The notes: generated from the sequence alone by a model not told the origin. Shown: positions 30 to 62,528, counted from the stretch's first letter. The stretch: 64,000 bases of DNA from IMGVR_UViG_3300035212_003113:1-64000; one strand, 5' to 3'. Translations and numbers: made by a program.

Positions 30-494
30 ATGAAACTAGACGTCTGGTCTCTCCTCGATGCTGGTGGCGTCTTTCAATACGGAAGGTACGAGATCAGGAA
101 CAGTAATGGCTTGCTTCACCGGGATGACGGCCCTGCTGCCATCTTTCCTGATGGCACTCAGCTTTGGTACCGGAATGGCTTGCTTCACCGGGATGATGGC
201 CCTGCTGCCATAGAGTCTAATGGTATACGATACTGGTACCGGAATGGCGAGCGTCACCGGGATGACGCCCCTGCTATCATCTGTCCTGATGGTAGTTGTC
301 ATTGGTACCGTGATGGCCAGCGTCACCGGGATGACGGGCCTGCTGCTATCTATCCGGATGGTACTCGGCTTTGGTATCGGCATGGCATGCGTCACCGGGA
401 AGACGGCCCAGCTATCATCTATCCTGATGGTAAGGGGTCTTGGCACCTGAATGGCGCCTATCAACACAAGGTAGGATGGATAAGTGAAACTTGA
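30..494 (+). CDS. HRxDGPA-repeat protein (5 repeats)
   Basis: 23-aa HR(D/E)DGPAxxYPDGxxxWYRNG repeats; N-term MKLDVW-SLLDAGG (lacks the ~5-aa EAISS-type segment of its paralogs). Confidence 0.85.
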   Translation: MKLDVWSLLDAGGVFQYGRYEIRNSNGLLHRDDGPAAIFPDGTQLWYRNGLLHRDDGPAAIESNGIRYWYRNGERHRDDAPAIICPDGSCHWYRDGQRHRDDGPAAIYPDGTRLWYRHGMRHREDGPAIIYPDGKGSWHLNGAYQHKVGWISET

Positions 495-951
495 TGCCTG
501 GGAAGCCATCTCATCCCTCATTGCAGCCGGCGGTGTCTTTCAATACGGAAGGTATCAGATTGTAGATAGTAATGGCGAGCTTCACCGGGAAGACGGACCT
601 GCTGTTGTATATCCACACGGTACTCAGTATTGGTATCGTAGCGACCAGCTACACAGGGATGATGGTCCTGCTATTATCTATCCGGATGGTAGTCAGGAAT
701 GGTACAGGAATGGCAAGCTCCACCGGGACAATGGGCCTGCTGTTGTATATCCAGATGGCACTCAGCATTGGTACCGGAACGACGAGCCTCACCGGGATGA
801 CGGGCCTGCTACCATCTATTCAAATGGCACTCAGAAATGGTACCGGGATGGCAAGCCTCACCGAGAAGACGGGCCTGCTATCATTTATTCAGACGGTACT
901 AAATCCTGGTATTTGAATGGCAAACTCCAGAAATGGCAAAATCCAGAGTAA
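484..951 (+). CDS. HRxDGPA-repeat protein (5 repeats)
   Basis: GTG start, MKLDAWEAISSLIAAGG N-term, 23-aa repeats. Confidence 0.85.
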   Translation: MKLDAWEAISSLIAAGGVFQYGRYQIVDSNGELHREDGPAVVYPHGTQYWYRSDQLHRDDGPAIIYPDGSQEWYRNGKLHRDNGPAVVYPDGTQHWYRNDEPHRDDGPATIYSNGTQKWYRDGKPHREDGPAIIYSDGTKSWYLNGKLQKWQNPE

Positions 952-958
952 AAAATAA

Positions 959-1282
959 ATGAAACTAGATGTCTGGGAAGCAATATCTTCCCTCCTCGAT
1001 GCCGGCGGTAAGTTTCAAGACGATAGGTATGAGGTCCGGGCTAGTAATGGCCATCTCCATCGGGGCGACGGGCCTGCTATCATATATGCAGACGGCACTC
1101 AGGAATGGTACCGGAATGGCGCGCTTCATCGGGGCGACGGCCCTGCGGTCATACTACCTAATGGCACTCAAAGCTGGTACCGGAATGGCCTGCGTCACCG
1201 GGCCGACGGTCCTGCTATCATCTATCCAGATGGTGATCAGGAATGGTACCGGGATGGCAATCGTCACTGGGTAGATAAATGA
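959..1282 (+). CDS. HRxDGPA-repeat protein (3 repeats)
   Basis: shared N-term plus repeats. Confidence 0.85.
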   Translation: MKLDVWEAISSLLDAGGKFQDDRYEVRASNGHLHRGDGPAIIYADGTQEWYRNGALHRGDGPAVILPNGTQSWYRNGLRHRADGPAIIYPDGDQEWYRDGNRHWVDK

Positions 1283-1575
1283 AACTAGAAGTCTGGGAAG
1301 ACATATTCTCCCTCATTGAAGCAGGCGGTACCTTTCAAAACGGAAGGTACGAGCTTACAAATAATAATGGAAAGATTCACCGGGATGGCGGCCCAGCTCT
1401 GATATATCTGGACGGTAGGCGCTATTGGTACCAGAATGGCCTGCGTCACCGGGCCTACGGTCCTGCTCTTACATATCCCGATGGCAGACAGTATTGGTAC
1501 TGGAACGGCGCGCTTGTTGATGAGCGGATCGGGGAGGGTTATCGTCAATCCGGTTCCACCGGGAAGATAAAATGA
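1279..1575 (+). CDS. HRxDGPA-repeat protein (2 repeats)
   Basis: shared N-term plus repeats; ATGA overlap. Confidence 0.85.
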   Translation: MKLEVWEDIFSLIEAGGTFQNGRYELTNNNGKIHRDGGPALIYLDGRRYWYQNGLRHRAYGPALTYPDGRQYWYWNGALVDERIGEGYRQSGSTGKIK

Positions 1576-1967
1576 AACTAGATCTCTGGGAAGCCTTGTC
1601 ATCTATCATCGAAGCAGGTGGTGTCTTTCGAAACGGAATATATGAGATCAGGAATAGTAATGGCATGATTCACCGGGATGACGGACCTGCCATTATATCT
1701 CAAGACGGTAGGCACTATTGGTACCGGGATGGCGTGCTTCATCGGGAAGACGGGCCTGCTATCGCATGTCCAGACGGTACTCAGGAGTGGTACCGGAACG
1801 GTACTATTCATCGGGATGGCGGGCCTGCTCTTATATATCAGGATGGTACTCAGGTTTGGTATCAGAATGATGAGATTCACCGTGATGATGGCCCTGCTAT
1901 TATCCATCCAGATGGCACTGAGATTTGGTGCCAGGATGGCCAGCGTAAACATAAGGCAGGAGACTAG
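1572..1967 (+). CDS. HRxDGPA-repeat protein (4 repeats)
   Basis: shared N-term plus repeats; ATGA overlap. Confidence 0.85.
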   Translation: MKLDLWEALSSIIEAGGVFRNGIYEIRNSNGMIHRDDGPAIISQDGRHYWYRDGVLHREDGPAIACPDGTQEWYRNGTIHRDGGPALIYQDGTQVWYQNDEIHRDDGPAIIHPDGTEIWCQDGQRKHKAGD

Positions 1968-2495
1968 ATGAAACTAGACGTCTGGAAAGCAATATCCTCC
2001 CTCCTCGATGCTGGCGGTAAGTTTGAGCACGGAAGATACCAGATCAGGAACAGTAAGGGCCATCTTCACCGGGAAGACGGGCCTGCTGAGGTATTCCCTG
2101 ACGGCTTCCAATACTGGTACCGGAATGGCGTGCTCCACCGTGATGACGGGCCTGCTGAGGTATTCCCTGACGGTAGGCAATGCTGGTACCGGAATGGCCA
2201 GCTACACCGGGAAGACGGGCCTGCCATTGTAGATCCGGATGGCAGTCATCATTGGTACCGGAATGACAAGATTCATCGGGATGATGGACCAGCTATCATT
2301 CATCCAGATGGTGAACAGCATTGGTACCAGAACGACGAGCCTCACCGGGAAGATGGGCCTGCTGTTATATTTTCAGACGGCAAACAATTTTGGTACCGGA
2401 ATGGCAAGCCTCACCGGGATGATGGACCAGCTATCATCTATCCAGACGGTACTCAGAAATGGTATCTGAATGGCAAACTTCAGAGTAAAAAATAA
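1968..2495 (+). CDS. HRxDGPA-repeat protein (6 repeats)
   Basis: shared N-term plus repeats. Confidence 0.85.
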   Translation: MKLDVWKAISSLLDAGGKFEHGRYQIRNSKGHLHREDGPAEVFPDGFQYWYRNGVLHRDDGPAEVFPDGRQCWYRNGQLHREDGPAIVDPDGSHHWYRNDKIHRDDGPAIIHPDGEQHWYQNDEPHREDGPAVIFSDGKQFWYRNGKPHRDDGPAIIYPDGTQKWYLNGKLQSKK

Positions 2496-2843
2496 ATGAA
2501 ACTAGATCTCTGGGAGGCTATCTCATCTCTCCTCCAAGCCGGAGGTGCCTTTCAACACATGAGGTACGAGATCAGGAATAATCATGGCGGGCTTCACCGG
2601 GATGATGGACCTGCTGTCATATATCCAAATGGCAAGCAGGAGTGGTACCGTAATGGCCAGCTTCACCGGGATGATGGACCTGCCGTCATATATCCAAGTA
2701 GTCAATACTGGTATCGCAATGGCCTGATTCATAGGGATGATGGTCCAGCAATTACATATTCAGATGGTGCTCAGTTCTGGTACCTGAATGGCAAGCGCTT
2801 TGGGGAAGATGAAAATGAAGATCCCGAGGAATACTTCCTGTAA
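2496..2843 (+). CDS. HRxDGPA-repeat protein (3 repeats)
   Basis: shared N-term plus repeats; acidic tail. Confidence 0.85.
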   Translation: MKLDLWEAISSLLQAGGAFQHMRYEIRNNHGGLHRDDGPAVIYPNGKQEWYRNGQLHRDDGPAVIYPSSQYWYRNGLIHRDDGPAITYSDGAQFWYLNGKRFGEDENEDPEEYFL

Positions 2844-3572: not shown

Positions 3573-3887
3573 ATGATTTCTCTACCATTTCATTCCATCA
3601 GCGAGCGACGCCCTAGCGACGGGCAAGAAGTGGCCTGGATTAGACGTGGAGCGGCATTTGGTTTTGATTCTTTCGAGATTCGCTATGATACCGCAGATTA
3701 TTGCTGGTTTGAACTAGGCGAAGATGGCGAGCACAACGGCACCCAGATCGGCTACAGCGGCGAAGAATCTCTTGAAGGTTGCCGCCTAGAAGTAATGTTC
3801 GGGAATGAAACCGCAGACCCGGAAACTCTCTGGTGTTCCATGGAAGAAATCTGGAAGATTCTTGACACAGAAAATCCGCAGCCGTGA
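3573..3887 (+). CDS. hypothetical protein
   Basis: ORF tiling between neighbours; start at second Met of track ORF. Confidence 0.7.
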   Translation: MISLPFHSISERRPSDGQEVAWIRRGAAFGFDSFEIRYDTADYCWFELGEDGEHNGTQIGYSGEESLEGCRLEVMFGNETADPETLWCSMEEIWKILDTENPQP

Positions 3888-4147
3888 AGCTGGATGACTG
3901 GGAGATGCGGGTCGCATTTGCTAAGGAAGACTGGCCGGAGGTTATTTCTATTATGGAATCTACCTTCGGTATCTCCCTGGTTGGCAGACCTACAAGAATC
4001 AATAGAGGCTTTTCTCAGTACCCAGAGATCTGGATCTGCATGCCACGCGGCGGCGCTGAATACGGTTGGTCAGGCCGATCCGGCTTTACCCAGGGACCGC
4101 TAGGCATTCCGATAGGCGAAGATATACAAATCTTTACCACAAAATAA
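3884..4147 (+). CDS. family A paralog
   Basis: MKLDDWEMRVAFAKEDW...TFG...YGW...GF. Confidence 0.8.
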   Translation: MKLDDWEMRVAFAKEDWPEVISIMESTFGISLVGRPTRINRGFSQYPEIWICMPRGGAEYGWSGRSGFTQGPLGIPIGEDIQIFTTK

Positions 4148-4649: not shown

Positions 4650-5036
4650 ATGAAACTTGATACCTGGGAAACTATTTCTTCAATCATTGAAGCCGGTGGT
4701 GTTTACAAAAACGGGTATTACTGCGTTCGCAACAGCAGGGGCCGGCTTCACCGGGATGACGGACCCGCTGCCATATATCCAGATGGTACTCAGTGTTGGT
4801 ACCAGGATGGCGGGCTTCACCGGGGTGATGGGCCAGCTATTATCTATCCAGATGGTACTCAATACTGGTGCCGGAATGGCAAGCGTCACCGGGATAACGG
4901 ACCAGCTATTATCTATCCAGATGGTACTCAGGAATGGTACAGGGCTGGACAGAGAGTGCCAGCCCCGCCCGCCCTAAAGCCGGACCCGCCCGATCCTGAG
5001 CGGTGCCCCGAACGCCACCAACAAGGAGCAATATGA
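4650..5036 (+). CDS. HRxDGPA-repeat protein (3 repeats)
   Basis: shared N-term plus repeats; C-term reads through motif copy 2. Confidence 0.85.
   Translation: MKLDTWETISSIIEAGGVYKNGYYCVRNSRGRLHRDDGPAAIYPDGTQCWYQDGGLHRGDGPAIIYPDGTQYWCRNGKRHRDNGPAIIYPDGTQEWYRAGQRVPAPPALKPDPPDPERCPERHQQGAI
4974..4999 (+). promoter_or_regulatory. motif copy 2
   Basis: CTAAA gccggacccgccc GATCCTGA. Confidence 0.6.
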
Positions 5037-6911: not shown

Positions 6912-7118
6912 ATGAAACTATTTGCTGAATACCTACTGGTAGATAGGGATCGCAAGTTTGTGCTGAGATTTGGCAGCGACACGTCCTCTCATCACATGCT
7001 ACATATGCGGGATGTTTATAGCGTTATCTATAGGCATCTTGCCCCGCTGCACATAGCTGCGGTAGATGTATTAGGTGAGCTGCATGTTCTAGATCTGGAC
7101 CGGCATGAAGCTGATTAG
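6912..7118 (+). CDS. family B paralog
   Basis: MKLFAEY...DVLGEL. Confidence 0.7.
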   Translation: MKLFAEYLLVDRDRKFVLRFGSDTSSHHMLHMRDVYSVIYRHLAPLHIAAVDVLGELHVLDLDRHEAD

Positions 7119-7302
7119 CTTTTATCAGATACGCACCGACAGCGGCTTGCGCTACTCGCAAGTACACGGCTCACATACCCGCGAAGAGGCAATTTTAGAA
7201 TACCATAGACTGCAATGGTTTCAGGATCGTCCGCTGCGACTGTATGAAATAAGCGTGCTAGGCGATGAGCGCGACATAACTCCAGAGGGCTTTAGATCAT
7301 GA
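7105..7302 (+). CDS. family B paralog
   Basis: MKLISFY...SVLGDER; 14-nt overlap. Confidence 0.7.
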   Translation: MKLISFYQIRTDSGLRYSQVHGSHTREEAILEYHRLQWFQDRPLRLYEISVLGDERDITPEGFRS

Positions 7303-7547
7303 GTGTTTGCAATCACCTTCCGGGCACGTTCTGTCACGACTGCTATAGCATTGCCGCTACGCCCCATGCCGATGGCACCCTTTCTACTGGTGCGCTGCCG
7401 CAGTCTACCAGTCCTGCCGAAGCAGATATCCTAAAACAACTACAGGAGCTGCGCGACGAAGTGGAAGAAATCCAGGAAGATTTACGCTACCTGCTATCGC
7501 ATGTGGCACCGGCAGGCAGCCGCCGTCGCTATAAAAAGCGGACATAG
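7299..7547 (+). CDS. hypothetical protein (Cys-rich N-term, coiled coil)
   Basis: ATGA overlap. Confidence 0.6.
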   Translation: MSVCNHLPGTFCHDCYSIAATPHADGTLSTGALPQSTSPAEADILKQLQELRDEVEEIQEDLRYLLSHVAPAGSRRRYKKRT

Positions 7548-7548
7548 T

Positions 7549-7758
7549 ATGAAGCTAATCAGTCACTATCTAGTATACGATAACCGCAATCTCCTGCGAG
7601 GAAGCATTCCACCGGAAAGGTTTACCACGCAAACCCGCGCGCAAATAACCGCATACTTCTTATCCGGTCTAGCCTACTTTGTTCGCAGACGCATGTTGCC
7701 TCTGCGCTTTATTGAGGTTAACGTACTAGGCGACCAGCGCGAGGTAAGTTTAGACTGA
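7549..7758 (+). CDS. family B paralog
   Basis: MKLISHY...NVLGDQR. Confidence 0.7.
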   Translation: MKLISHYLVYDNRNLLRGSIPPERFTTQTRAQITAYFLSGLAYFVRRRMLPLRFIEVNVLGDQREVSLD

Positions 7759-7967
7759 TGGAATCCCCACACGCCAGCAACATAGACTTCATGATAAAAG
7801 CTCTGGAGTCTAATCCAGATAAGAAGTTTATTGTTCTAGAAGGCAGCGGTCCCGGAGATACTCTGCTGATTGTCTGGCGGAGCGCCAACGAACGAGCGCC
7901 CGGACAATACTACGAGATCCGCGTTGCAGAGATCAAAGAAACTGCTTTCATTCAGGTGAGCAAATGA
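7758..7967 (+). CDS. hypothetical protein
   Basis: TGATG overlap. Confidence 0.6.
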   Translation: MESPHASNIDFMIKALESNPDKKFIVLEGSGPGDTLLIVWRSANERAPGQYYEIRVAEIKETAFIQVSK

Positions 7968-8272
7968 AACTGGACGCTTTCGCTTTGCGAAACGCTGTTG
8001 CAAACAAGGACATAAAAACAATCCTTGATTTGTTCGCAGTGCATTTTGAAGACATAGCCCGCCGGAAGGATGAGCAATGGCAAATAAAGATTTGTCCGTG
8101 GGAACCGCTAGGAATGCTGCGACTAAGAACATCTAGCGGATCTTCCTGCTGGAACGGCCTTGATTACTTCAATGACAGTAAGCTTTACTCTCGTAATGGG
8201 ATAAACCTCATTATGTTTGCCCCGGATTTCTGTAGTGAAACTTGTTCTATTGTTACTGGCACAACTAGATGA
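7964..8272 (+). CDS. family A paralog
   Basis: MKLDAFALRNAV...HF...CW. Confidence 0.7.
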   Translation: MKLDAFALRNAVANKDIKTILDLFAVHFEDIARRKDEQWQIKICPWEPLGMLRLRTSSGSSCWNGLDYFNDSKLYSRNGINLIMFAPDFCSETCSIVTGTTR

Positions 8273-8483
8273 CGCCGGCGATAAGACAGGCATGATTGCC
8301 GCCATAGCCCACTACTTTGGTATCCCTCTACCAAACAATGTCCGCGACATGCGCGACAAGGGAGATGCGTGGAGCCTGCTTGTGATTAGCTATGGCAACA
8401 ATTGCTATTATTTTTACGCTAATGGATCGTCTTCAGTTATTGATTTCAAAGCACCGCTAGATAATATAGGTACCATCTTCTAG
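8235..8483 (+). CDS. family A paralog (divergent)
   Basis: GTG MKLV...AHYFGI. Confidence 0.6.
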   Translation: MKLVLLLLAQLDDAGDKTGMIAAIAHYFGIPLPNNVRDMRDKGDAWSLLVISYGNNCYYFYANGSSSVIDFKAPLDNIGTIF

Positions 8484-8485
8484 CC

Positions 8486-8752
8486 ATGAAGCTACTTGAC
8501 CTCCAACTGGACGAAGCATTTGCTGTCCGTGATTATGACGGCATGGTGACGCTAGTTGCGCAGCACCTAAGCATACGGCTCCCAAGAGAGAGGGCGGCTA
8601 TAGATACATCTAGTCCCGGCAACTGGCGCTGGGGCCGAGTGGTTATTTATCAAGATGGCTCCCGCTATATCTATTGCCGTGGTGGTGGCAGTAGAACAAG
8701 TCCTACTGTTTCCATCTTTGATTGCGGAATCATATCAGAGTTGCCAAGATGA
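8486..8752 (+). CDS. family A paralog
   Basis: MKLLDLQLDEAF..RDY...HL. Confidence 0.7.
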   Translation: MKLLDLQLDEAFAVRDYDGMVTLVAQHLSIRLPRERAAIDTSSPGNWRWGRVVIYQDGSRYIYCRGGGSRTSPTVSIFDCGIISELPR

Positions 8753-9039
8753 AGCTAGAGTCGTATGCTATGCGCGAGGCGCTGGAGGCCGGAGATACGG
8801 CCACCGCTGTGCGCGTGCTTGCGACCTACTATGGCTTTCCTGATCCGGTAGAAATACCGATTACCGTAATCGGCAAAAACATGCCGCCTTTTGAAAGAGA
8901 AAGACGCCTGCTATTCTGGTGCGGCGACGACTTCTATGAGTGGAGTTCTGAGTCCGGCTTTGACCGGGGCGTGCATCCTTATTCCCTAGGCAGCGACGTA
9001 GCACCGAGCCGCATAGAAAGCATCATTCTTTGGAAATAG
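8749..9039 (+). CDS. family A paralog
   Basis: MKLESYAMREAL...YYG...YEW...GF. Confidence 0.8.
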   Translation: MKLESYAMREALEAGDTATAVRVLATYYGFPDPVEIPITVIGKNMPPFERERRLLFWCGDDFYEWSSESGFDRGVHPYSLGSDVAPSRIESIILWK

Positions 9040-9099
9040 CATATGCTGGCTACCAGACGCCGCCCGCCCCTTTTGCTATGAATACTCGAGTGACTTGTC

Positions 9100-9660
9100 A
9101 TGAGTAACAGCTTTAAGTTATTTAAAAAAGCCGATAGTGAGACGGCTACCGGCCTGGCTACCTCTGTAGTCAGCAAAGCCCTTCCACATTTTGCTCCGGT
9201 CAATAAAGTAAAAAAGCTAAAGGATTTACTGCGGGTTATATCTAAATTCAAAAAAGGCACAAGCCTCACCATGAATATTCAAGATGAGGATGTGGGAGGA
9301 GCCATTCAGGATGCGATAAGCCTGATTCCAAATCCTGTTGCTCGTTCCTTGTCCACCGGCCTTGCCGTAGGCAGGATGCTGGGTGATGCAGGCGTTGACA
9401 GTGCTATTTCAACGATCATGGATATATCATTCGATAGCGGAGAGCAGCTTGCGCTTGAAGCAATCGGCGACTCTGTTATGCGGGCAGTCGAATCAAAAGA
9501 CAGGGATCATGCCCGTGCTTTACTTGGATCAGCCACCCGAGCAATCCAAGGACTAAAAGACCGGGTAGATGCCCGCACTAGTGGCCCTAAGTTCGAAATG
9601 CTTGTTGCGATTGCAGATCTACAGTCAAAGATACAGCAGGTCTTGTCCAAGCTAAACTAG
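9100..9660 (+). CDS. hypothetical protein, possibly late/virion
   Basis: helical ORF preceded by CTATGAAT. Confidence 0.7.
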   Translation: MSNSFKLFKKADSETATGLATSVVSKALPHFAPVNKVKKLKDLLRVISKFKKGTSLTMNIQDEDVGGAIQDAISLIPNPVARSLSTGLAVGRMLGDAGVDSAISTIMDISFDSGEQLALEAIGDSVMRAVESKDRDHARALLGSATRAIQGLKDRVDARTSGPKFEMLVAIADLQSKIQQVLSKLN

Positions 9661-9727
9661 TCAAACAGCCGATTGGCAAACGCTTTTTATTTATTACTTC
9701 TCTAGTGATCTCAGGGATGGATGGCTC

Positions 9728-10009
9728 ATGAAGCTACAGTCTATCTTAGTAGCTGAACGGCTTGCTTCCAACGATATGCGAGGCGCATGCAATGCCCTGC
9801 TAGCGAACTTCAACCTCAGTGATCTGCCCACAGGTGCAGAAGTAAGAGTAAATCCCAGCGAAGTTCATGGGGATCATATAATTATTTACACTGCTGGGCA
9901 CTGGTACGAGTGGGGCGAGCGCATGGGATTCAGGACTGGACTGTCTTCTAGTTTCAGCCTACCAGCTACCCGTGCTGTAATCTGGTTGCGGAAGAGGAAG
10001 CCGACATGA
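9728..10009 (+). CDS. family A paralog
   Basis: MKLQS...NFNL...YEW...GF. Confidence 0.75.
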   Translation: MKLQSILVAERLASNDMRGACNALLANFNLSDLPTGAEVRVNPSEVHGDHIIIYTAGHWYEWGERMGFRTGLSSSFSLPATRAVIWLRKRKPT

Positions 10010-10109
10010 TGCTGCTTGCTGGATTACTTGGTGTTGTTATTGTTGCTGCGGGCTTTCGAGAGGCTGCCCGCAAGCGGTTCCAAGGCACAGCGATAAAGGT
10101 ATTGCCACC

Positions 10110-10367
10110 ATGAAGCTAGACCGGTCTGCAATCATTCACGCCCTAGAGTCCGGCAACAATACAGGGGCCGTGCAAGTCTTGTTTCACTACTTCCGGCTTG
10201 GAGAAGTACCGGGGGATTTGCAAATAATAAGGCGCGTATCTCCTACTATGGAGATGATTTACTATAATGCGGAGTGGTATGGCTGGACAGCCGCACACGG
10301 CTTTCGCAAAAGCCGACTGCCACAAGTGCAAGATCCCCCGCTAGTACAGATATGGTTTCCGCTATGA
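10110..10367 (+). CDS. family A paralog
   Basis: MKLDRS...HYF...YGW...GF. Confidence 0.8.
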   Translation: MKLDRSAIIHALESGNNTGAVQVLFHYFRLGEVPGDLQIIRRVSPTMEMIYYNAEWYGWTAAHGFRKSRLPQVQDPPLVQIWFPL

Positions 10368-10651
10368 AGCTGGAATCCTATGTACTACAAAACGCTATCT
10401 ATGAAGGGCGGCACGAAGAAGCAGTCCGAGGTCTGCTGCAACATTTTGGCATAAACTTACCGGATGCACAGCTGAACATACAGGCAGCAACCGATTCATG
10501 TTATGGCATTTACGTATGGGTAAGCACTAAGTACTTTGAATGGTACGAGGGTAGCTTTTTCTCTGCAAGCTCTTATGTGAGAGGAACGCCATTGCGCGCA
10601 GAAGTAGTAATCGCAACGGTATGGATACGAAGCAAAAATGAAAATCTCTGA
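10364..10651 (+). CDS. family A paralog
   Basis: MKLESYVLQNAIYEG; close to 11566. Confidence 0.8.
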   Translation: MKLESYVLQNAIYEGRHEEAVRGLLQHFGINLPDAQLNIQAATDSCYGIYVWVSTKYFEWYEGSFFSASSYVRGTPLRAEVVIATVWIRSKNENL

Positions 10652-10832
10652 GTGGGCAGTACAGGATGCAGTAGACAGCGGAGACTTCTCCCGCATACTA
10701 CCCATTCTGATTGAGCATTATGGCGTAGGCAGGATTCCCGACTGGGCTGATCCGCAACACGAGCATCCACTTAGTTGCCGCATATGTCAGATGATCCGCC
10801 CTTGGTTGTTTGCAAAAATGGACAGCAAGTGA
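10638..10832 (+). CDS. family A paralog (short, lacks YxW-GF half)
   Basis: MKISEWAVQDAV...EHYG. Confidence 0.6.
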   Translation: MKISEWAVQDAVDSGDFSRILPILIEHYGVGRIPDWADPQHEHPLSCRICQMIRPWLFAKMDSK

Positions 10833-11083
10833 AACTAGATACCTGGGAAGCCGTATCTTCTCTCCTCGATGCCGGTGGTAAGTTTTTTATCGATAAGTAT
10901 TGCCTTGTAAATGACAAAGGTCACTATCATCGGGAAGACGGCCCAGCTGTCATATATCCTAATGGCGATCAGTTTTGGTTGCGCAACGATAAGCTTCACC
11001 GGGAAGACGGCCCGGCTGTCGTCTATTCAGATGGTAAAAAACATTGGTACCTGGATGGTCGACTCCAGCGGGCAGACAAATGA
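10829..11083 (+). CDS. HRxDGPA-repeat protein (2 repeats)
   Basis: GTG MKLDTWEAVSSLLDAGG. Confidence 0.85.
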   Translation: MKLDTWEAVSSLLDAGGKFFIDKYCLVNDKGHYHREDGPAVIYPNGDQFWLRNDKLHREDGPAVVYSDGKKHWYLDGRLQRADK

Positions 11084-11484
11084 AACTTGATATCTGGGGT
11101 GCAATAGATTCTATCCTTGAAGCTGGTGGAAAGTTTTATCAAGGAAAGTATGTCTTTCTAAATGATAATGGTGAGCTTCACCGGGAAGATGGGCCTGCTG
11201 TTATAGAGCCGGATGGTACTCAGGAGTGGTGCCGAAATAACAAGCTTCATCGTGATGATGGACCTGCTATTATATGCCCTGATGGTAGTCAATATTGGTA
11301 CCAGAATGGTGAGCTTCACCGGGATAAAGGTCCCGCTGTATTGTATCCAGATGGTAGTCAGCTTTGGTACCGGAATGGCGAGATTCATCGGGATGGCGGG
11401 CCTGCTGCCGTTTATCCGGATGGCACTCAGCTTTGGTACCGTAATGGCAAGAAGCGCCGTACCGGGCCGGGCAGCAAAGGATAA
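11080..11484 (+). CDS. HRxDGPA-repeat protein (4 repeats)
   Basis: MKLDIWGAIDSILEAGG. Confidence 0.85.
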   Translation: MKLDIWGAIDSILEAGGKFYQGKYVFLNDNGELHREDGPAVIEPDGTQEWCRNNKLHRDDGPAIICPDGSQYWYQNGELHRDKGPAVLYPDGSQLWYRNGEIHRDGGPAAVYPDGTQLWYRNGKKRRTGPGSKG

Positions 11485-11565: not shown

Positions 11566-11859
11566 ATGAAGCTGGAATCCTATGTACTGCAAAGCGCCAT
11601 CTACGAAGGCCAGTACGAAGAAGCGGTGCGCCTGCTGCTGCAACATTTCGGCATAAACTTACCAGGTGTGCAGCTCATCATACAGACCGAACATGATATA
11701 GGCTACGGCATTAGGGCTTGGGTTGGCTCAGATCCCTATGAATGGTATGAAGGTAATTTTTATTTTCCTGCGCCTGACTGGAACACTGACCGGGATTACA
11801 GCAGAGTAAAGATCGTAAGCGCTACGGTTTGGAGCAAGTACAAGCTCAAGAACTCATGA
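11566..11859 (+). CDS. family A paralog
   Basis: MKLESYVLQSAIYEG; close to 10364. Confidence 0.8.
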   Translation: MKLESYVLQSAIYEGQYEEAVRLLLQHFGINLPGVQLIIQTEHDIGYGIRAWVGSDPYEWYEGNFYFPAPDWNTDRDYSRVKIVSATVWSKYKLKNS

Positions 11860-30257: not shown

Positions 30258-30258
30258 C

Positions 30259-47638: not shown

Positions 47639-47646
47639 TAGGGCAG

Positions 47647-48235: not shown

Positions 48236-48236
48236 G

Positions 48237-48491: not shown

Positions 48492-48529
48492 TGTAAATTC
48501 CAGCGATAGAGAATGGGATCGGTGTCTGC

Positions 48530-50228: not shown

Positions 50229-50360
50229 AGCCCTAGGCGAAAGTCGCTGGACAGACTGCATGCCGGGCTTAAAGAAGCCTGTTGGTTTGAAACTGGCGAA
50301 ACCACATTATTATCCAGATCTCACGAGCTATACTCTGCTTATGTGTTCCTTAAGTAAAAT

Positions 50361-50621
50361 ATGAAGCTCGATAATTATCAAATGCTTGAGGCATTTCACG
50401 AAGAGAACTGGCGGAGCGCCATAGCTATGCTGAGGCAGCACTTCTGTCTGGAATCGCCCCCGCATCTTTGCTACGAGGTGCTAGAGCACGAACACCATGC
50501 TGAGTGCGTAGAGATCAGACAGGATAACGTGATCTATTATTGGCATGAATGCGATGGGTTTACGAATTCACGCAAGCTACCGACAACGAATGCAACGCTT
50601 ATATATTGCAGGCCGCCGTAG
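50361..50621 (+). CDS. family A paralog
   Basis: MKLDNYQM...NW...HF...YYW...GF. Confidence 0.8.
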   Translation: MKLDNYQMLEAFHEENWRSAIAMLRQHFCLESPPHLCYEVLEHEHHAECVEIRQDNVIYYWHECDGFTNSRKLPTTNATLIYCRPP

Positions 50622-50675
50622 AGTAAGTAACAGCAACAGTTTGGTGCGCGTACTATTGCGAACCAGCGAGGTAAT

Positions 50676-51050
50676 GTGATGACAGCAGAGGACATTAAAA
50701 GCGCAGATTTGTGCCCTGTTACAGTTACGGAAGAAGCTCTGCTGCAATTCCGGGCAGCCTATTCTGCGGACCCAGGTCCCGATGTCTTTGGCATTAGGAT
50801 CGGCGTAAAGGGCGGTGGTTGCTCTGGATTCATGCACAATCTTGAGTTCATCAAACGGGCGGATGTCGACCCGGAAGAAGATTCCATTTATCTTGTGGGC
50901 GGGCTACACTTTGTAATCGACTGCTTCAGCGAGCCGTATTTAAAAGGCACTACGGTTGACTATCTGCGCACACTACAAGAAAGCGGCTTCAAGTTCCGTT
51001 CTGACGAGATCCGGCGCACATGTGGTTGCGGCGCTTCTTTTTCCAAGTGA
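50676..51050 (+). CDS. iscA: HesB/IscA-family Fe-S cluster assembly protein
   Basis: GVKGGGCSG and CGCGASF motifs. Confidence 0.9.
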   Translation: MMTAEDIKSADLCPVTVTEEALLQFRAAYSADPGPDVFGIRIGVKGGGCSGFMHNLEFIKRADVDPEEDSIYLVGGLHFVIDCFSEPYLKGTTVDYLRTLQESGFKFRSDEIRRTCGCGASFSK

Positions 51051-51346
51051 AGCTGGCATCGTATCTCATGCGAGAAGCCTTTGATGCCCAAGACTGGGAC
51101 AGTGTAATTTCTATTTTAATAGATCATTTCGGCTTACAAAGCGCAACACAACTAATCCAATCTTCGGCGCCTAAACTAGGTACTGGTTACTGGGACACTG
51201 CATTTATCTACATGGGCAAATCGAAATACTGCTGGAATTCCTATTGTGGCTTTTATCGCGGTATTGTATTTAATAGCTCAGGCCTTGACGCATTCGTGTG
51301 TATTGCCAAGGGGATAGGCGACGTCCCTCACACGGTTAGCAAATGA
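51047..51346 (+). CDS. family A paralog
   Basis: GTG MKLASYLM...DW...HFGL...YCW...GF. Confidence 0.8.
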   Translation: MKLASYLMREAFDAQDWDSVISILIDHFGLQSATQLIQSSAPKLGTGYWDTAFIYMGKSKYCWNSYCGFYRGIVFNSSGLDAFVCIAKGIGDVPHTVSK

Positions 51347-51627
51347 AGCTAGCATCTTATGCGATAGCCGATGCTATTGAGAGAAGAGACTGGCTAGGCG
51401 CAGCGAGATGCCTCGCAGATCATTTTGGCATAACTGGCTCTCTCCCGCCTCTTGAGCAGATAAAGCTAAAGGTGGATTGCGATACGGGCAACGTATGCTG
51501 CATGAGTATATCAGTTGGGCATCGCATCTATTATTGGGAAGAGGGCGGATGCTTTGAGGGCGGCCTCCTGCGCTACCCACGAGAAGTTCCTAGCATTTTT
51601 ATAGAGTGCCGCAATGAAAATACTTGA
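51343..51627 (+). CDS. family A paralog
   Basis: MKLASYAI...DW...HFGI...YYW. Confidence 0.8.
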   Translation: MKLASYAIADAIERRDWLGAARCLADHFGITGSLPPLEQIKLKVDCDTGNVCCMSISVGHRIYYWEEGGCFEGGLLRYPREVPSIFIECRNENT

Positions 51628-51880
51628 CTATGCTGTAGCAGATGCACTCTCCCGCAGGTCATGGCAGGAAGCTCTGCGAATACTGTTTCTTAATTTTAAT
51701 CTCGATCCTAACGGTGCCTCTTCTATTTTCATAGAAGAGTATGTCGCCAGGCGCCCTAGTGTGGCCTACCACGACGGCAATCGCATTTACTCGTGGACAG
51801 AGGGCTTTGGCTGGAAATGTTCTGATGGATGGACCAGTGGTCGACCGCGAGCATGGATCAAGATACCGAAAACCAAATGA
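51614..51880 (+). CDS. family A paralog
   Basis: MKILDYAV...SW...YSW...GF. Confidence 0.8.
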   Translation: MKILDYAVADALSRRSWQEALRILFLNFNLDPNGASSIFIEEYVARRPSVAYHDGNRIYSWTEGFGWKCSDGWTSGRPRAWIKIPKTK

Positions 51881-52176
51881 AACTCAACCATTACCGGATG
51901 ATTTGCGCGTTCGAGAGCAAAGACTGGAAAAGTGCTGTCGCGATCCTAGTGGATCAGTTCAAGCTTACAGGCATTAGCCAGGTACAGCTAGAGCATTATC
52001 CTGTTGTTCGTTTTCCAGGTTACCGAGAAATATTTCTTACTTTGCCTGGTCATCAGGGCTATTCTTGGATGCCAGAGGATTCTTTCATCAGTGAGATCTG
52101 TGGACCGGTTACCTGCCCCACGGTCAGCCTATGGTACCCGTCATCAGTAAGGCATAGTGAGGTTCTAGATCTTTGA
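51877..52176 (+). CDS. family A paralog
   Basis: MKLNHYRM...DW...YSW. Confidence 0.8.
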   Translation: MKLNHYRMICAFESKDWKSAVAILVDQFKLTGISQVQLEHYPVVRFPGYREIFLTLPGHQGYSWMPEDSFISEICGPVTCPTVSLWYPSSVRHSEVLDL

Positions 52177-56432: not shown

Positions 56433-56696
56433 GTGAAACTACTTGATTATGAGATAGGCGAAGCTGCGACCGCAGGCTCTACTTTGGACATGGTGCGCAT
56501 AGCTGCGCGATACATGGGCCTTAATGCTAATGCCGCCAGTCTAGAAGTTAAAAGAAGCAGATACTTAATAGACCTGCGGGATTGGACAAGGATAGAGATT
56601 CCCTGCGGAGATACCATCCATATACTTTATACAGATGGATTCATTCGCAGAATAAAAAACGATGGCTGTGTCTCTGCTCTTATATCTGGGTGGTAA
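56433..56696 (+). CDS. family A paralog (divergent)
   Basis: GTG MKLLDYEIGEAA...YMGL. Confidence 0.7.
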   Translation: MKLLDYEIGEAATAGSTLDMVRIAARYMGLNANAASLEVKRSRYLIDLRDWTRIEIPCGDTIHILYTDGFIRRIKNDGCVSALISGW

Positions 56697-60082: not shown

Positions 60083-60739
60083 GTGAAGATATTTCATATT
60101 TCTGATACGCACGGCTCAGGCTTCTGGGATACGCCGCTAGGAGCAGACATCGATGTTGTTGTTCATAGCGGCGATGCCTTTCCTAACTCTACTCGTGGTC
60201 ATGTTGCAACCGAGCAGGTATATCAGTCCGGCTGGCTTAAACAGTTTGTAGAACCAATACGGACATGGTTGAATGGTCGCCCATTCATTTATGTACCGGG
60301 TAATCATGACTATATCGAGTTTGCAGACTTCCTACCTGCGCACCGAATTGATACAGACCCTATTCATGTGGCAGGCAAGTCCTGGCGAGGATTTCGCCAG
60401 ATACCATGGATTCGCGGGGAGTGGGCGGGTGAAATACATGCGCCAGACATGCAGGATATAATCGAAAGCATCTTCGACTGCGATAGTTCACTCTCTGCCC
60501 CAGAGGGCGACGTACTGGTGTGTCACTCTCCACCCGCCGGTGTATTTGATGCCAGCCCTAATGGCCTTTTCCATTACGGTATCAGCGCACTGAGCAATGC
60601 CCTTCAATATAGGAACCACGCTTTCAAGGCTGTGCTTTTCGGTCACGTACACCAGGAAAAGTACTGCCAGATGCGAAGGATGGGTATTATATTTAGCAAT
60701 GCCGCAGACAATCCTGGCGGCACCGTGGAGCTGCCTTGA
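60083..60739 (+). CDS. calcineurin-like metallophosphoesterase
   Basis: SDTH, SGD, GNHD, HSPP, GHVH. Confidence 0.85.
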   Translation: MKIFHISDTHGSGFWDTPLGADIDVVVHSGDAFPNSTRGHVATEQVYQSGWLKQFVEPIRTWLNGRPFIYVPGNHDYIEFADFLPAHRIDTDPIHVAGKSWRGFRQIPWIRGEWAGEIHAPDMQDIIESIFDCDSSLSAPEGDVLVCHSPPAGVFDASPNGLFHYGISALSNALQYRNHAFKAVLFGHVHQEKYCQMRRMGIIFSNAADNPGGTVELP

Positions 60740-61293
60740 AGCTTTCTGCTGCCGCTGCCCTAGTTGGAATTCCTGATGACTTCAGGCCAGCTAAGATAGG
60801 AGATCCATATAATTATCGTACCAAGATATTTGTACGCAATCGAGAATACATAAGAATCTTCTTACTGCAAGACGGCTCACTTTATTCAAAAGAATATGGC
60901 TACATGGCCAAGACTGATGGCGGGCGACTGACCCCAGACAGCTCTGTATCCAGAGGGCCGGCTATCCTAGTGTACTATCAGGATGGCTCCCCTTCTTCGC
61001 AGGCGTGGGCACGCGAGGGCGAGATTCATCGTGACAGCAGCAATGGTCCAGCACTGGTAAAGTATCACAAAGATGGAGATATGTATTCTGCTGAGTATCG
61101 GAATGGCGGGCGACTGCATCGTCCAAGGAAGCGAGGACCGGCTCTTTATTATGAGCGCGGCAGCGGTGATATTTACTTTGGCTTTTGGGAGGATGGCATC
61201 TGCATTGCAGAGTTCGAAGGGCCAATCCTAAAAGATTATGATCAGCCATTAGAGTTTTTTGAATCTAGTTATAAGAAAGTGCGGAGAAGTTAA
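60736..61293 (+). CDS. family D: MKL start plus divergent HRxxGPA repeats
   Basis: HRDSSNGPA, HRPRKRGPA. Confidence 0.7.
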   Translation: MKLSAAAALVGIPDDFRPAKIGDPYNYRTKIFVRNREYIRIFLLQDGSLYSKEYGYMAKTDGGRLTPDSSVSRGPAILVYYQDGSPSSQAWAREGEIHRDSSNGPALVKYHKDGDMYSAEYRNGGRLHRPRKRGPALYYERGSGDIYFGFWEDGICIAEFEGPILKDYDQPLEFFESSYKKVRRS

Positions 61294-61526
61294 TGAAGAA
61301 CGATATCCTTGGAATTGCACTACTTGCTGCTACGGCAGTTAACATTGCTATGTTTTTTGCCATCGCTGTTCCAGCGCTCGGTCTAGACGATGACGAAGAG
61401 AAGCCTGATCCGCCTGTGCCAGAGTTCAATTACACTGAGTCCCAGGTCCATTTTCTGCGGCGTGTGACAGATCCGGTAGAGACCGGCGGTTTGCAATGCT
61501 CCCGTTCTTATGCCTGTGAACCTTGA
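61293..61526 (+). CDS. small membrane-anchored protein
   Basis: N-terminal hydrophobic helix. Confidence 0.55.
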   Translation: MKNDILGIALLAATAVNIAMFFAIAVPALGLDDDEEKPDPPVPEFNYTESQVHFLRRVTDPVETGGLQCSRSYACEP

Positions 61527-61888
61527 TCGGGTTTTTCCGCAACTGCGCGCACCCAGACCTTTTCCGGCATCTCTGCGATGTTAGGCTCGTAGTATTCTTC
61601 TTCCTGATCAAACCGGATCTCATATCCGGTTGCAGTACCCATTTCTGCGCGTAGCTTGGCCTTGGCCTGCTCTTTGGCAACCGTAACTCCGCGATCTACA
61701 TCGCTGCCTTGGATATCTGCATAGCCTACTGCTGCCACCTCGCCCGCTTTTAATCCTGCGTTTGGGCTGGCAATCCAGTCTGGCTTGTCCTGAGCCAGGC
61801 GCATAATAACGCCATCCAAGGCACTGGCGGCTTCAGTATGGCCGCGCTCGTCCAGAAAGTTTGCGATTTTTATCAGGTCTTTTAGCAT
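61508..61888 (-). CDS. leader-family protein
   Basis: MLKDLIKIANFLDERGHTEAASALDGVI. Confidence 0.75.
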   Translation of the reverse strand: MLKDLIKIANFLDERGHTEAASALDGVIMRLAQDKPDWIASPNAGLKAGEVAAVGYADIQGSDVDRGVTVAKEQAKAKLRAEMGTATGYEIRFDQEEEYYEPNIAEMPEKVWVRAVAEKPDQGSQA

Positions 61889-61927
61889 AGCATCCTCGCT
61901 CCATATCCAATAAATTCATAGTAAGAC

Positions 61928-62227
61928 ATGAAGCTGAACCTGGCCAGAATCATACTTGATGCGCCCGAAGGCTGGGCGGTGCGTAACATCGGCAGGCAGC
62001 TAATCCTACTAAGTCCTCATGGTAAACATCCGAACTGCGAAATAGTTTTTACACTGCGAAAAGATGGATCTTTAATCTATAAAGACTACTACGAAAACGG
62101 CATCTTCCACCGCGAAGACGGCCCAGCAGTAACTGTATATAGCGAGTGCGGTAATACTGCAGAAGAGCTTTTCTACTGTCAGGGAAAGCTGTTAAACAGA
62201 AAGTGCTACAAGGATGAAGCTGAATAA
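61928..62227 (+). CDS. family D paralog
   Basis: MKLNLA...PEGW...HREDGPA. Confidence 0.75.
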   Translation: MKLNLARIILDAPEGWAVRNIGRQLILLSPHGKHPNCEIVFTLRKDGSLIYKDYYENGIFHREDGPAVTVYSECGNTAEELFYCQGKLLNRKCYKDEAE

Positions 62228-62528
62228 AGCGGCGGTGATTGCCGGACTACCTGACGGCTGGGAGCTGCAATACGATGGCGATATCATTTTGTATCAGATG
62301 GGAGACGCAGCAGTACAGCATGAATTCAGCGGCAACAACTTAATCAGTATTTCACATTTCCTAGAAGGAGAGCTGCACCGCGACCCTGTCAACGGGCCAG
62401 CTTATATTTGGTGGGTCGGCGATCAGGTTTATGAGAAATACTTTTTTGCTGGACTGCCTGCTGCCAGTCCCGCTGGCCACTACGGCGTGGTAAAAAAAGA
62501 TGACGGCAGCGTGCTACTTACTTACTAG
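62214..62528 (+). CDS. family D paralog
   Basis: MKLNKA...PDGW...HRDPVNGPA. Confidence 0.75.
   Translation: MKLNKAAVIAGLPDGWELQYDGDIILYQMGDAAVQHEFSGNNLISISHFLEGELHRDPVNGPAYIWWVGDQVYEKYFFAGLPAASPAGHYGVVKKDDGSVLLTY

What the first reader, a model, noticed from the sequence alone, without database searches (positions are those of the whole stretch)
30..62528. Universal MKL start junction that also supplies the upstream stop
Roughly 70 genes from at least five unrelated families and many singletons start (A/G/T)TGAA(G/A)(C/A)T. About 40 of them overlap the previous stop by exactly 4 (RTGA), 11 (e.g. ATGAAGCTTGA 24502, GTGAAACTTGA 484) or 14 nt (e.g. ATGAAGCTACATGA 27586, GTGAAGCTGATTAA 42044). 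Upstream proteins therefore end in forced tails such as ISET, HEAD, DETA, GNET, TYEA, HEAT, READ, TREA, DEAA, DEAE. The 11-mer carries stops in both other frames, so any gene placed upstream is terminated and translationally coupled without needing an SD. Alternative explanations are a shared N-terminal protein signal or simple selection for A-rich starts.
Basis: partly seen in the sequence, partly recalled or inferred. Interest (0 to 1): 0.78.

Follow-up and report, generated by a model that had tools for sequence, protein, structure and literature searches.

The report
Shared MKL start of phage gene families
About 70 small genes in this stretch of a 372-kb lake-water jumbo phage begin with the same three amino acids, Met-Lys-Leu, because a few hugely multiplied protein families share a conserved N-terminal helix; the stop-start overlaps are an ordinary by-product, not a purpose-built gene junction.

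Summary
DTGAARMT occurs 112 times against 27.7 ± 5 expected, 90 of them on the + strand. About 72 of roughly 166 + strand ORFs start with it, and 36 of 69 overlap the previous stop by 4, 11 or 14 nt, with exactly the tails listed.

About three quarters of these genes belong to two paralogue families: A (about 95 aa, at least 43 copies) and B (MORN-like repeats, 13 copies).

The constraint acts on the peptide. Only wobble sites vary (AAR, CTN), with near-maximal codon entropy. K2 and L3 are as conserved as the core Trp across 156 divergent sequences. MKL is kept equally in the 32 genes that overlap nothing.

Stops at 11 or 14 nt are local accommodations: 15 of 16 starts that need one have one, against 10 of 53 that do not. 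SD-like cores are as frequent as at other genes. No DNA similarity exists beyond the 8-mer.

AlphaFold2 places MKL at the start of a confident N-terminal helix in both A and B.

One puzzle remains. Families A, B, C, D and F share only this 13-14-residue helix, and B's relatives outside this phage clade lack it.

The parts
30..2843 (+). Tandem array of seven family B genes (MORN-like repeats). Starts are at 30, 484, 959, 1279, 1572, 1968 and 2496. All begin MKL(D/E)xW. Junction spacings are -11, +7, -4, -4, 0 and 0.
   Evidence: (Pfam DUF6745 E 7.5e-11)
4650..5036 (+). Family B gene (MKLDTWETISS).
10829..11484 (+). Two family B genes, at 10829 (GTG start) and 11080 (ATGA overlap).
60736..62528 (+). 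Three B-related genes with a second kind of MKL N-terminus (MKLxxAxxIxGxPDGW): 60736, 61928 and 62214. 62214 overlaps 61928 by 14 nt (tail DEAE).
3884..4147 (+). Family A gene (GTG start, GTGA overlap).
7964..10832 (+). Family A array: 7964, 8235, 8486, 8749, 9728, 10110, 10364, and a partial copy at 10638.
11566..11859 (+). Family A gene, a close paralogue of 10364.
13807..14076 (+). Family A gene (GTG start).
16844..17122 (+). Family A member that does not start with MKL (MNSHH). Its lineage is the one genuine exception in the family.
17930..18229 (+). Family A gene (GTG start).
22075..22386 (+). Family A gene. It overlaps the upstream ORF by 11 nt (ATGAAACTTAG, tail GNET).
24502..24786 (+). 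Divergent A-like gene ('family I'; hhalign probability 88% over 52 columns). 11-nt overlap ATGAAGCTTGA, upstream tail TYEA.
27586..30561 (+). Largest family A array: 27586, 27862 (Leu coded by TTG), 28812, 29096, 29383, 29631, 29964 and 30259. ORFans that share only the N-terminal helix are interleaved: 28139 (family F) and 28495 (family D).
30615..30949 (+). Decayed family A copies: a frameshifted copy at 30615-30870 and a 25-codon stump at 30875-30949.
31323..32878 (+). Family A genes at 31323, 31597, 32256 and 32591, plus family C gene 31868. Two 11-nt overlaps (31597, 31868).
38915..39498 (+). Two family A genes joined by ATGA.
41776..42337 (+). Two family A genes with a 14-nt overlap, GTGAAGCTGATTAA (tail READ).
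47327..48817 (+). Family C gene 47327 (11-nt overlap, tail TREA) followed by family A genes 47647, 47945 (14-nt overlap, tail DEAA) and 48530.
49923..52176 (+). Family A array: 49923, a fragment at 50200, 50361, 51047, 51343, 51614 (MKI) and 51877.
56433..56696 (+). Family A gene (GTG start). The independent gene caller uses the same start.
6912..7758 (+). Small 'family E' genes of 65-70 aa (6912, 7105, 7549) that share only MKL with the other families. 21354 is a paralogue.
21553..21873 (+). Family D gene, paralogue of 28495. 14-nt overlap (tail DETA).

Best explanation
Shown: the window is nt 1-64000 of a 371,675-bp viral contig found in lake-water metagenomes. I read it as a jumbo phage. 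The window lies in a hyper-variable zone packed with tandemly multiplied small accessory genes.

NTGAARMT is the back-translation of a conserved N-terminal peptide, Met-Lys-Leu. In many of the genes the peptide continues as MKL(D/E)x(Y/W)(E)(I/M)x(E)A(L/F). In the models it is the first turns of an N-terminal amphipathic helix. Selection acts on the amino acids, not on the DNA.

Most copies exist because two families were amplified: A with at least 43 copies in the window, and B with 13. Smaller families carry the same N-terminal helix.

The overlaps follow from ordinary rules in a compact genome. A Lys codon makes every start NTGA, so an upstream gene in that frame ends by position 4. GAA and RCT cannot be stops, so an upstream gene in the other frame can end no earlier than position 11 or 14. 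It does so only where codons 3-5 of the downstream gene happen to accommodate a stop.

Inferred, not shown: MKL is kept because it starts a helix that is part of the fold, and possibly also because Lys followed by an aliphatic residue favours early translation.
For: Genome. The identity of the contig is given. The runs that hold it are lake-water metagenomes.

Families. blastp and HMM clustering give family A with 40 members (36 with the motif) and family B with 13 (all with the motif). Further A copies and pseudogene fragments were found in a six-frame search. A profile search of 1.84 billion representative proteins found 359 hits. Among the best 150 were 126 small proteins, of which 117 start (M/L/V)K(L/I). 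Most exceptions are miscalled or cut starts.

Conservation. K2 is present in 154 of 156 sequences and L3 in 145 of 156, on a par with the core W61 at 150 of 156.

Synonymous sites. In 88 distinct family A genes from the window and five related loci, K2 is AAG 64 and AAA 23. L3 is CTA 35, CTG 23, CTT 13, CTC 10 and TTR 4. Both entropies are close to those of body codon usage and of other conserved residues.

Structure. AlphaFold2 gives family A a mean pLDDT of 91.5 with a helix at residues 2-13 (pLDDT 92). Family B has a mean pLDDT of 93.5 with a helix at residues 3-14.

Junctions.
- MKL is kept whether or not there is an overlap.
- Early phase-1 stops occur only where they are needed.
- SD-like cores are present.
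- There is no extended DNA similarity around the starts.

Distribution.
- None of the genes with a Pfam hit outside A and B starts MKL: AAA, VWA, SpoU, RNA ligases, R2K, LamG.
- In the 28 kb upstream of the window only 2 of 49 genes start MKL, against about 36% in the window plus the 29 kb downstream (79 of 222).
- Related phages carry the same arrays.

Background. 4-nt overlaps are the commonest overlap in prokaryotes and need only an A after the start codon. Long overlaps are set by the first out-of-frame stop in the downstream gene (PMC3887535).
Against: - Descent within a family cannot be the whole story. Family B's homologues outside this clade have other N-termini (MK[LI] in 1 of 95), so B acquired the MKL helix.
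- Families C, D and F share only residues 1-14 with A (hhalign E 4e-5 to 4e-4; PSSM of positions 4-14, p = 6e-4).
- About 16 further ORFs share only MK(L/I).
- An invariant Lys at position 2 is unusual for a purely structural role.
- Wobble sites are free but not neutral. CTA is 41% at codon 3 against 17% in gene bodies, and TTR is 5% against 18%.
Confidence: 0.6

Rival explanations
1. NTGAARCT(TGA) is a DNA/RNA junction module kept by selection because it supplies stops in both other frames and couples translation without an SD. On this view any gene can be dropped in upstream.
For: - Every motif start contains NTGA, and 36 of 69 junctions use stops inside the first 14 nt.
- 4-nt overlaps are more frequent at motif genes (21 of 69) than at others (12 of 94; p = 0.01).
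- SD-like cores are rarer at overlapping junctions (30%) than after gaps above 20 nt (61%; p = 0.04).
- The codon bias at Leu3 shows some selection below the amino-acid level.
Against: - The conservation pattern follows the genetic code exactly: AAR, CTN.
- 32 non-overlapping genes keep MKL.
- Only about 10 of 70 starts have stops in both other frames.
- The CTT-GA form is depleted.
- 64% of starts without a phase-1 neighbour have no phase-1 stop within 35 nt.
- SD frequency equals that of other genes.
- There is no conserved DNA beyond the 8-mer.
- The lower SD frequency at overlaps is also seen at non-motif genes.
Confidence: 0.08
2. MKL, with the helix it starts, is a portable N-terminal recognition tag that this phage clade places on otherwise unrelated accessory proteins. 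It could serve packaging into the capsid, as the T4 capsid targeting sequence does. It could also serve processing, turnover or docking to a common partner.
For: - Families A, B, C, D and F share only the first 13-14 residues.
- B's homologues outside the clade lack the helix.
- Further N-terminal types downstream also begin with MKL.
- K2 is invariant.
- The consensus has (I/M)-x-E at positions 8-10. From my own knowledge, this resembles the T4 prohead protease site L/I-x-E.
- The genome encodes ClpS, an N-terminal recognin, and M16 peptidases.
Against: - E10 is present in only 44% of family A, and the position is Ser in B, so there is no conserved cleavage site.
- AlphaFold2 models the helix confidently as part of both proteins rather than as a loose leader.
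- More than 70 tagged genes per 64 kb is far beyond any known set of packaged proteins.
- No head genes or prohead protease were seen in the 120 kb sampled.
- The ClpS and M16 links are guesses.
Confidence: 0.17
3. MKL is selected for protein yield. Lys at codon 2 and an aliphatic residue at codon 3 would make an efficient initiation and early-elongation 'ramp'. Genes in these arrays, many of them reinitiating after an upstream stop, would then converge on it or retain it.
For: - Lys is strongly favoured at codon 2 in bacteria for efficient initiation (PMC2034453, abstract seen).
- The identity of residues 3-5 changes yield strongly. Lys or Asn followed by Ile or Tyr is best, whatever the synonymous codon (PMC6920384). 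That would give a peptide-level signature like the one seen.
- 29% of non-A/B genes here also have Lys at codon 2.
- Some MKI starts are on ordinary enzymes.
Against: - AAA, the codon usually favoured for initiation, is not enriched: 26% at codon 2 against 37% in gene bodies.
- Leu was not among the best early residues in that study.
- Genes with Pfam hits in the same operons do not use MKL.
- This does not explain the shared residues 4-14.
Confidence: 0.15

Closest known systems
ATGA / NTGA 4-nt stop-start overlaps and translational coupling by termination-reinitiation (PMC3887535, PMC6728339); adenine enrichment at the fourth CDS site (PMC5850271)
   Same: The genes are co-directional and the upstream TGA sits inside NTGA of the next start. 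There are 21 such junctions at motif genes. All that is needed is an A after the start codon, which the Lys codon supplies.
   Different: Here the A is fixed as part of an invariant Lys codon, and that codon is conserved whether or not an upstream gene uses it. Coupling itself was not measured.
Long 'phase 1' unidirectional overlaps set by the first out-of-frame stop in the downstream gene (PMC3887535)
   Same: The 11- and 14-nt overlaps lie in that phase and end at the first available stop.
   Different: The fixed MKL codons exclude 5- and 8-nt overlaps, so the lengths pile up at 11 and 14. The stops sit in the variable codons 3-5 and are present mainly where they are used.
Capsid targeting sequence of the T-even phage internal proteins (PMC3012670)
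   Same: A hyper-variable set of small phage proteins shares a conserved N-terminal peptide of about 10 residues starting MK. Some of the families are otherwise unrelated.
   Different: No conserved protease site was found, and no evidence of packaging. The helix is modelled as part of the fold. The copy number is an order of magnitude higher. Relatedness of this phage to T4 was not established.
Lineage-specific expansions of small proteins in jumbo phages, for example about 35 zinc-ribbon copies in Bacillus phage G (PMC7824862)
   Same: One small domain is multiplied in tandem to dozens of copies within one jumbo phage genome.
   Different: The domain is different. Family A has no Pfam family and no structural neighbour. 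Several families share one N-terminal helix.
SUKH / SMI1-KNR4 immunity proteins in tandem 'polyimmunity' arrays (PMC3113570)
   Same: Both are small alpha+beta proteins in long tandem arrays of divergent paralogues. There is a weak sequence resemblance around HFG(L/I)xLP.
   Different: Only 1 of 37 members gives a sub-threshold Pfam hit. The confident model matches no SUKH structure. No toxin genes were seen nearby.

Membership tests
NTGA 4-nt overlapping gene pairs | Co-directional genes with the upstream TGA sharing TG with the downstream start codon. | tested here: met
   21 motif genes and 12 other genes. An independent gene caller gives the same coordinates.
NTGA 4-nt overlapping gene pairs | Translation of the downstream gene depends on termination of the upstream one (coupling). 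| not testable with these tools
   This needs reporters or ribosome profiling. SD-like cores are less frequent at overlaps (30%) than after gaps (61%), which is compatible with coupling but not specific to it.
   Only non-synonymous positions are fixed. Identity over the 15 nt upstream is 0.26-0.28, which is random, and no cross-family pair exceeds 20 of 36 nt downstream.
   The frame-2 stop is always present. A frame-3 stop within 14 nt is present in only 10 of 53 starts that do not use it. CTT-GA is depleted.
SUKH / SMI1-KNR4 superfamily (for family A) | Significant profile match to SUKH families. | tested here: not met
   PF09346 scores E 9e-5 and 23.5 bits, below the 25.4-bit cut-off, in 1 of 37 members. 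Language-model look-alikes are SUKH clusters at 0.91-0.92, but with fewer than 170 shared features.
SUKH / SMI1-KNR4 superfamily (for family A) | SUKH fold. | tested here: not met
   The model has pLDDT 91.5. No PDB match was found by Foldseek (E > 0.28) or VIA-align (Z at most 3.3). AFDB, BFVD and ESM Atlas matches have TM at most 0.45. A missing match does not prove that the folds differ.
MORN-like repeat proteins / DUF6745 (for family B) | Repeats of the type WYxNGxLHRxDGPA and a profile match above threshold. | tested here: met
   PF20530 scores E 7.5e-11 and 42.2 bits against a 27-bit cut-off. The repeats are visible in the alignments. 106 homologues were found. The model is made of beta-hairpin repeats.
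T4-type capsid targeting sequence | A conserved N-terminal leader shared by otherwise unrelated proteins. | tested here: inconclusive
   Residues 1-14 are shared by families A, C, D and F, and more weakly by B. However, 75% of the carriers belong to two families.
T4-type capsid targeting sequence | A conserved prohead-protease cleavage site at the end of the leader. | tested here: not met
   Position 8 is I/M/V/L in 99% of family A, but position 10 is Glu in only 44% of A and Ser in B.
T4-type capsid targeting sequence | The proteins are present in virions, and the genome has a T4-like head module. | not tested
   Only about 120 kb of the 372 kb was read, and no head genes were seen in it.
Sec or lipoprotein signal peptide (a common source of MK(K/L) starts) | A hydrophobic core of 10 or more residues after the basic N-terminus. 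| tested here: not met
   Positions 4, 7 and 10 are mostly D or E. The segment is modelled as an amphipathic helix in a soluble domain. No signal-peptide predictor was run.

The most novel reading that the evidence does not exclude
MKL plus the helix it starts could be a clade-specific, transferable N-terminal tag. The phage would put it on unrelated accessory proteins (family A, the MORN-like family B, and several ORFan families) so that one piece of machinery can handle them all. That machinery could act in packaging, as with the T4 capsid targeting sequence, or in N-terminal processing or turnover involving the phage's own M16 peptidases and ClpS. B acquiring the tag while its outgroup lacks it would be one visible grafting event.
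Probability: 0.15. Interest if true: 0.8.

Novelty: new variant of a known kind. Interest (0 to 1): 0.42.

Why it matters
The junction idea as stated mostly dissolves into known rules: paralogue amplification, a conserved N-terminus, and ATGA and first-stop overlaps. That is a useful caution for motif-based scans. A motif whose free positions are exactly the wobble sites is a peptide, not a DNA signal.

Three things remain of interest.
1. About a third of the genes over at least 90 kb of a 372-kb phage begin with the same tripeptide.
2. Several families that are not detectably related share one 13-14-residue N-terminal helix, and one of them acquired it.
3. The main family, with at least 43 copies in 64 kb, has a confident predicted fold with no known neighbour.

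If the helix proves to be a handling tag, it would be a second natural example of the principle behind the T4 capsid targeting sequence. It would also be a handle for finding the accessory proteins of uncultured jumbo phages.

Tried and rejected
1. MKL ORFans as frameshifted derivatives of family A. A six-frame HMM search found out-of-frame hits only at true decayed A copies (30615-30949), and none over families C, D or E.
2. Recent exchange or gene conversion of 5' ends. No cross-family pair shows raised DNA identity, and the upstream 15 nt are random. Codon entropies at conserved residues are near maximal.
3. CTA-G as a back-up TAG stop for upstream genes ending in NTGA. CTA is no more frequent at 4-nt overlaps (7 of 21) than elsewhere.
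4. SUKH identity of family A. This was not upheld.
5. Identifying families C and D through the ESM Atlas gave no informative hits. PHROGs gave nothing for ten representatives.
A megablast against phage records found nothing.
7. An outgroup test for a second MKL family (45489) found only close relatives.
8. BLAST clustering after removing the first 14 residues shattered family A, so it could not be used to count families.
10. The host is unknown, so no host baseline was possible. The only outside baseline is MK(L/I) in 1 of 95 family B homologues from other genomes.

Full report
WHAT THE WINDOW IS

The window equals nt 1-64000 of a 371,675-bp contig that is held three times in public collections: IMG/VR UViG 3300035212_003113, NCBI JBFDDO010002112.1 and an ENA assembly. 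The sequencing runs that contain it are lake-water and river metagenomes. It has about 51% G+C, and almost all its genes are on the + strand. Five tRNA genes are scattered among them. Nothing in 50,697 phage records is close to it.

The recognisable genes are typical of very large phages:
- a MoxR-type AAA ATPase;
- a DUF2201 metallopeptidase-VWA protein;
- an M16 peptidase;
- an R2K ATP-grasp protein;
- a 1096-aa Laminin_G_3 protein;
- a metallophosphoesterase.

SpoU methylase lies at the right-hand end of the window, and two RNA ligases lie just downstream of it. 'Jumbo phage' is my inference from these genes and from the IMG/VR listing. No head or tail genes were seen in the roughly 120 kb I could read.

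DTGAARMT occurs 112 times against 27.7 ± 5.0 in dinucleotide shuffles. Of these, 90 are on the + strand and 22 on the - strand.

In a simple model of 164 + strand ORFs, 70 start with the motif. Two further family members that the model had missed bring this to about 72. The gene calls stored with the public contig were made independently of me, and they use the same starts: 19 of 32 genes in the first 11 kb.

Of the 69 motif genes with an upstream neighbour, 21 overlap it by 4 nt, 7 by 11 nt, 8 by 14 nt and 1 by 38 nt.

MOST CARRIERS BELONG TO TWO FAMILIES

blastp and iterated HMM searches put 40 ORFs in family A and 13 in family B.
- Family A proteins are about 95 aa long. Their consensus is MKLxxYxMxEAFxxxDWxxAVxxLxxHFG(L/I)...YxWxxxxGF. 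36 of the 40 have the motif.
- Family B proteins are MORN-like repeats of the type WYRNGxLHRDDGPA. They match Pfam DUF6745 above threshold. All 13 have the motif.

A six-frame search added more A copies at 10110, 48530 and 10638, and decayed copies at 30615-30949. The gene at 24502 is a divergent A relative (hhalign probability 88% over 52 columns). So about three quarters of the 'universal' starts are paralogues of two families.

Family A is a real family and is restricted in range. A profile search of 1.84 billion representative proteins gave 359 hits. Some of these are spurious matches to giant low-complexity proteins. Of the 126 small proteins among the best 150, 107 start MKL, 7 start MKI and 3 use GTG or TTG before KL. 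Nearly all the rest have miscalled or truncated starts.

THE CONSTRAINT IS ON THE PEPTIDE

Across 156 sequences that are typically 25-45% identical, K2 (154 of 156) and L3 (145 of 156) are as conserved as the core tryptophan (150 of 156).

I examined 88 distinct family A genes from the window and from loci of related phages.
- Lys is AAG 64 times and AAA 23 times.
- Leu is CTA 35, CTG 23, CTT 13, CTC 10 and TTR 4.
- Codon entropies are 0.83 of 0.95 bits for Lys and 2.07 of 2.44 bits for Leu, similar to those at other conserved residues (A11, D16, A20, F28, Y59, G66, F67).

Position 6 is restricted to purines, exactly as a Lys codon requires. This is the signature of amino-acid selection.

The wobble sites are nevertheless not neutral. 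CTA is over-used at codon 3 (41% against 17% in gene bodies). TTR is under-used (5% against 18%). I have no explanation for this bias. It is not linked to 4-nt overlaps.

THE JUNCTION PROPERTIES ARE GENERIC

Because codon 2 is AAR, every start reads NTGA, so an upstream gene in that frame ends by position 4. This is the commonest overlap in prokaryotes and needs only an A after the start codon (PMC3887535).

In the other frame, GAA and RCT cannot be stops, so 5- and 8-nt overlaps are impossible and the first options are 11 and 14 nt. Those stops are not built into the motif. They lie within 14 nt in 15 of 16 starts whose upstream gene is in that frame, but in only 10 of 53 other motif starts (Fisher p = 8e-8). 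64% of those others have no such stop within 35 nt.

MKL is equally conserved in the 32 genes that overlap nothing, including genes after gaps of 145, 401 and 504 nt.

SD-like cores lie upstream of 40% of motif genes, 47% of other genes and 12.5% of random positions, with a G peak at -9 to -6 in both gene classes. They are rarer at overlapping junctions (30%) than after gaps above 20 nt (61%), and the same trend holds for non-motif genes.

Upstream of the starts, pairwise DNA identity is random (0.26-0.28). No cross-family pair shows raised identity downstream. There is therefore no cassette-boundary element beyond the 8-mer.

WHAT MKL DOES IN THE PROTEINS

AlphaFold2 with the 37 paralogues gives family A a confident model: mean pLDDT 91.5 and pTM 0.80. 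It has a helix at residues 2-13, a helix at 17-28 and five strands. The first ten residues have pLDDT 92.

Family B gives a mean pLDDT of 93.5, with a helix at residues 3-14 followed by beta-hairpin repeats.

MKL is thus the start of an N-terminal amphipathic helix. That the helix is needed for the fold is inference, because I could not read the coordinates.

The family A model has no neighbour in PDB, AFDB clusters, BFVD or the ESM Atlas. Two weak leads had suggested a SUKH assignment: one sub-threshold Pfam hit and language-model look-alikes. The assignment is not upheld, and I do not file family A under SUKH.

WHAT PARALOGY DOES NOT EXPLAIN

1. Of 106 homologues of family B, only the 11 from this phage clade start MKL and carry MKLDxWEAISSLLxAGG. 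The other 95 have unrelated N-termini, with MK(L/I) in one of them. The MORN-like family therefore gained the helix in this lineage.
2. Families C (31868, 47327), D (21553, 28495) and F (28139) align to family A only over residues 1-14 (hhalign E 4e-5 to 4e-4).
3. A scoring matrix of family A positions 4-14, leaving out MKL itself, scores non-A/B MK(L/I) proteins above other proteins (p = 6e-4) and scores family B higher still (p = 1e-6). Family C also keeps the YxWxxxxGF motif of A, so it may be a rearranged relative.
4. About 16 further ORFs share only MK(L/I). Some are ordinary enzymes: MKI on the M16 peptidase and on the metallophosphoesterase. A few rest on my motif-biased choice of start.

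Genes with Pfam hits outside A and B never start MKL.

The distribution is regional.
- In the 28 kb upstream of the window, 2 of 49 genes start MKL.
- In the window plus the 29 kb downstream, the share is 79 of 222 (36%).
- The downstream stretch contains yet another N-terminal type, MKLxxAAALIxxP(D/E), on ORFans of 130-165 aa.

Related phages at about 93% and about 70% protein identity, and more distant contigs, show the same arrays and junction types.

VERDICT

The sequence feature is real and far beyond chance. It is best read as a conserved N-terminal peptide of amplified accessory-protein families. The stop-start overlaps are ordinary consequences of a Lys codon at position 2 and of genome compaction.

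Three readings remain open, and only experiments can separate them:
- the shared helix is only structural and inherited, my preferred reading (0.6);
- it is a handling tag analogous to the T4 capsid targeting sequence (PMC3012670) (about 0.17);
- it is a favourable early-translation sequence (PMC6920384; PMC2034453) (about 0.15).

Noticed in passing
L017:12481-12783 (about 11 kb downstream of the window end; ENA contig 302507-302809): The phage encodes a full-length ClpS homologue, the adaptor that recognises N-terminal Leu, Phe, Tyr and Trp for ClpAP (Pfam PF02617, E 2.7e-26). This is an unusual gene for a phage. It is curious in a genome where a third of nearby proteins start Met-Lys-Leu, but no link has been shown.
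   Followed up: partly
window 29631-29942 as representative; all family A genes: Family A has a high-confidence AlphaFold2 model (pLDDT 91.5): two N-terminal helices and a five-stranded sheet. It has no structural neighbour in PDB, AFDB clusters, BFVD or the ESM Atlas, and no Pfam or PHROG family. It may be an undescribed fold.
   Followed up: partly
window 42776-46954: A conserved module of MoxR-type AAA ATPase, DUF2201 metallopeptidase-VWA protein, two small ORFs and an M16 peptidase. The relative L014 keeps the module and has a second M16 gene (L014:8624-9724).
   Followed up: no
window 12482-12551, 18388-18465, 25125-25212, 35619-35704, 35813-35886: Five tRNA genes lie singly among the small accessory genes rather than in one cluster: Thr-TGT, Met-CAT, Ser-ACT, Leu-TAA and Gln-CTG.
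   Followed up: no
window 30615-30949: A frameshifted family A copy and a 25-codon stump lie in a 500-nt gene-poor gap. This shows that the arrays lose copies as well as gain them.
   Followed up: partly
codon 3 of family A genes throughout the window: Leu is coded by CTA 2.5 times more often than in gene bodies. TTA/TTG and CTT before GA are avoided. The cause is unknown.
   Followed up: partly
window 14625-15332, 19503-20234, 25286-26689; L017:14414-15109; L014:13456-14241: Another family with its own conserved N-terminus (M(K/R)xxxAxxLxxIAxEL) recurs in the window, downstream of it and in a relative. Conserved N-termini are therefore not peculiar to the MKL families.
   Followed up: no
L018 and L020 (28 kb upstream of the window): The genome is organised differently here. 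Spacers are 100-300 nt long, several genes are on the - strand, one ORF exceeds 2378 aa, and almost no gene starts MKL (2 of 49).
   Followed up: partly
window 58671-59468 and 61508-61888, - strand: These are the only two - strand genes called in the window (265 and 126 aa). Small + strand ORFs that my model placed over them are probably spurious.
   Followed up: no
L011:3588-4046: A more distant relative carries a gene with a Pfam Tad3 hit (a family of anti-defence proteins) next to its family A array.
   Followed up: no
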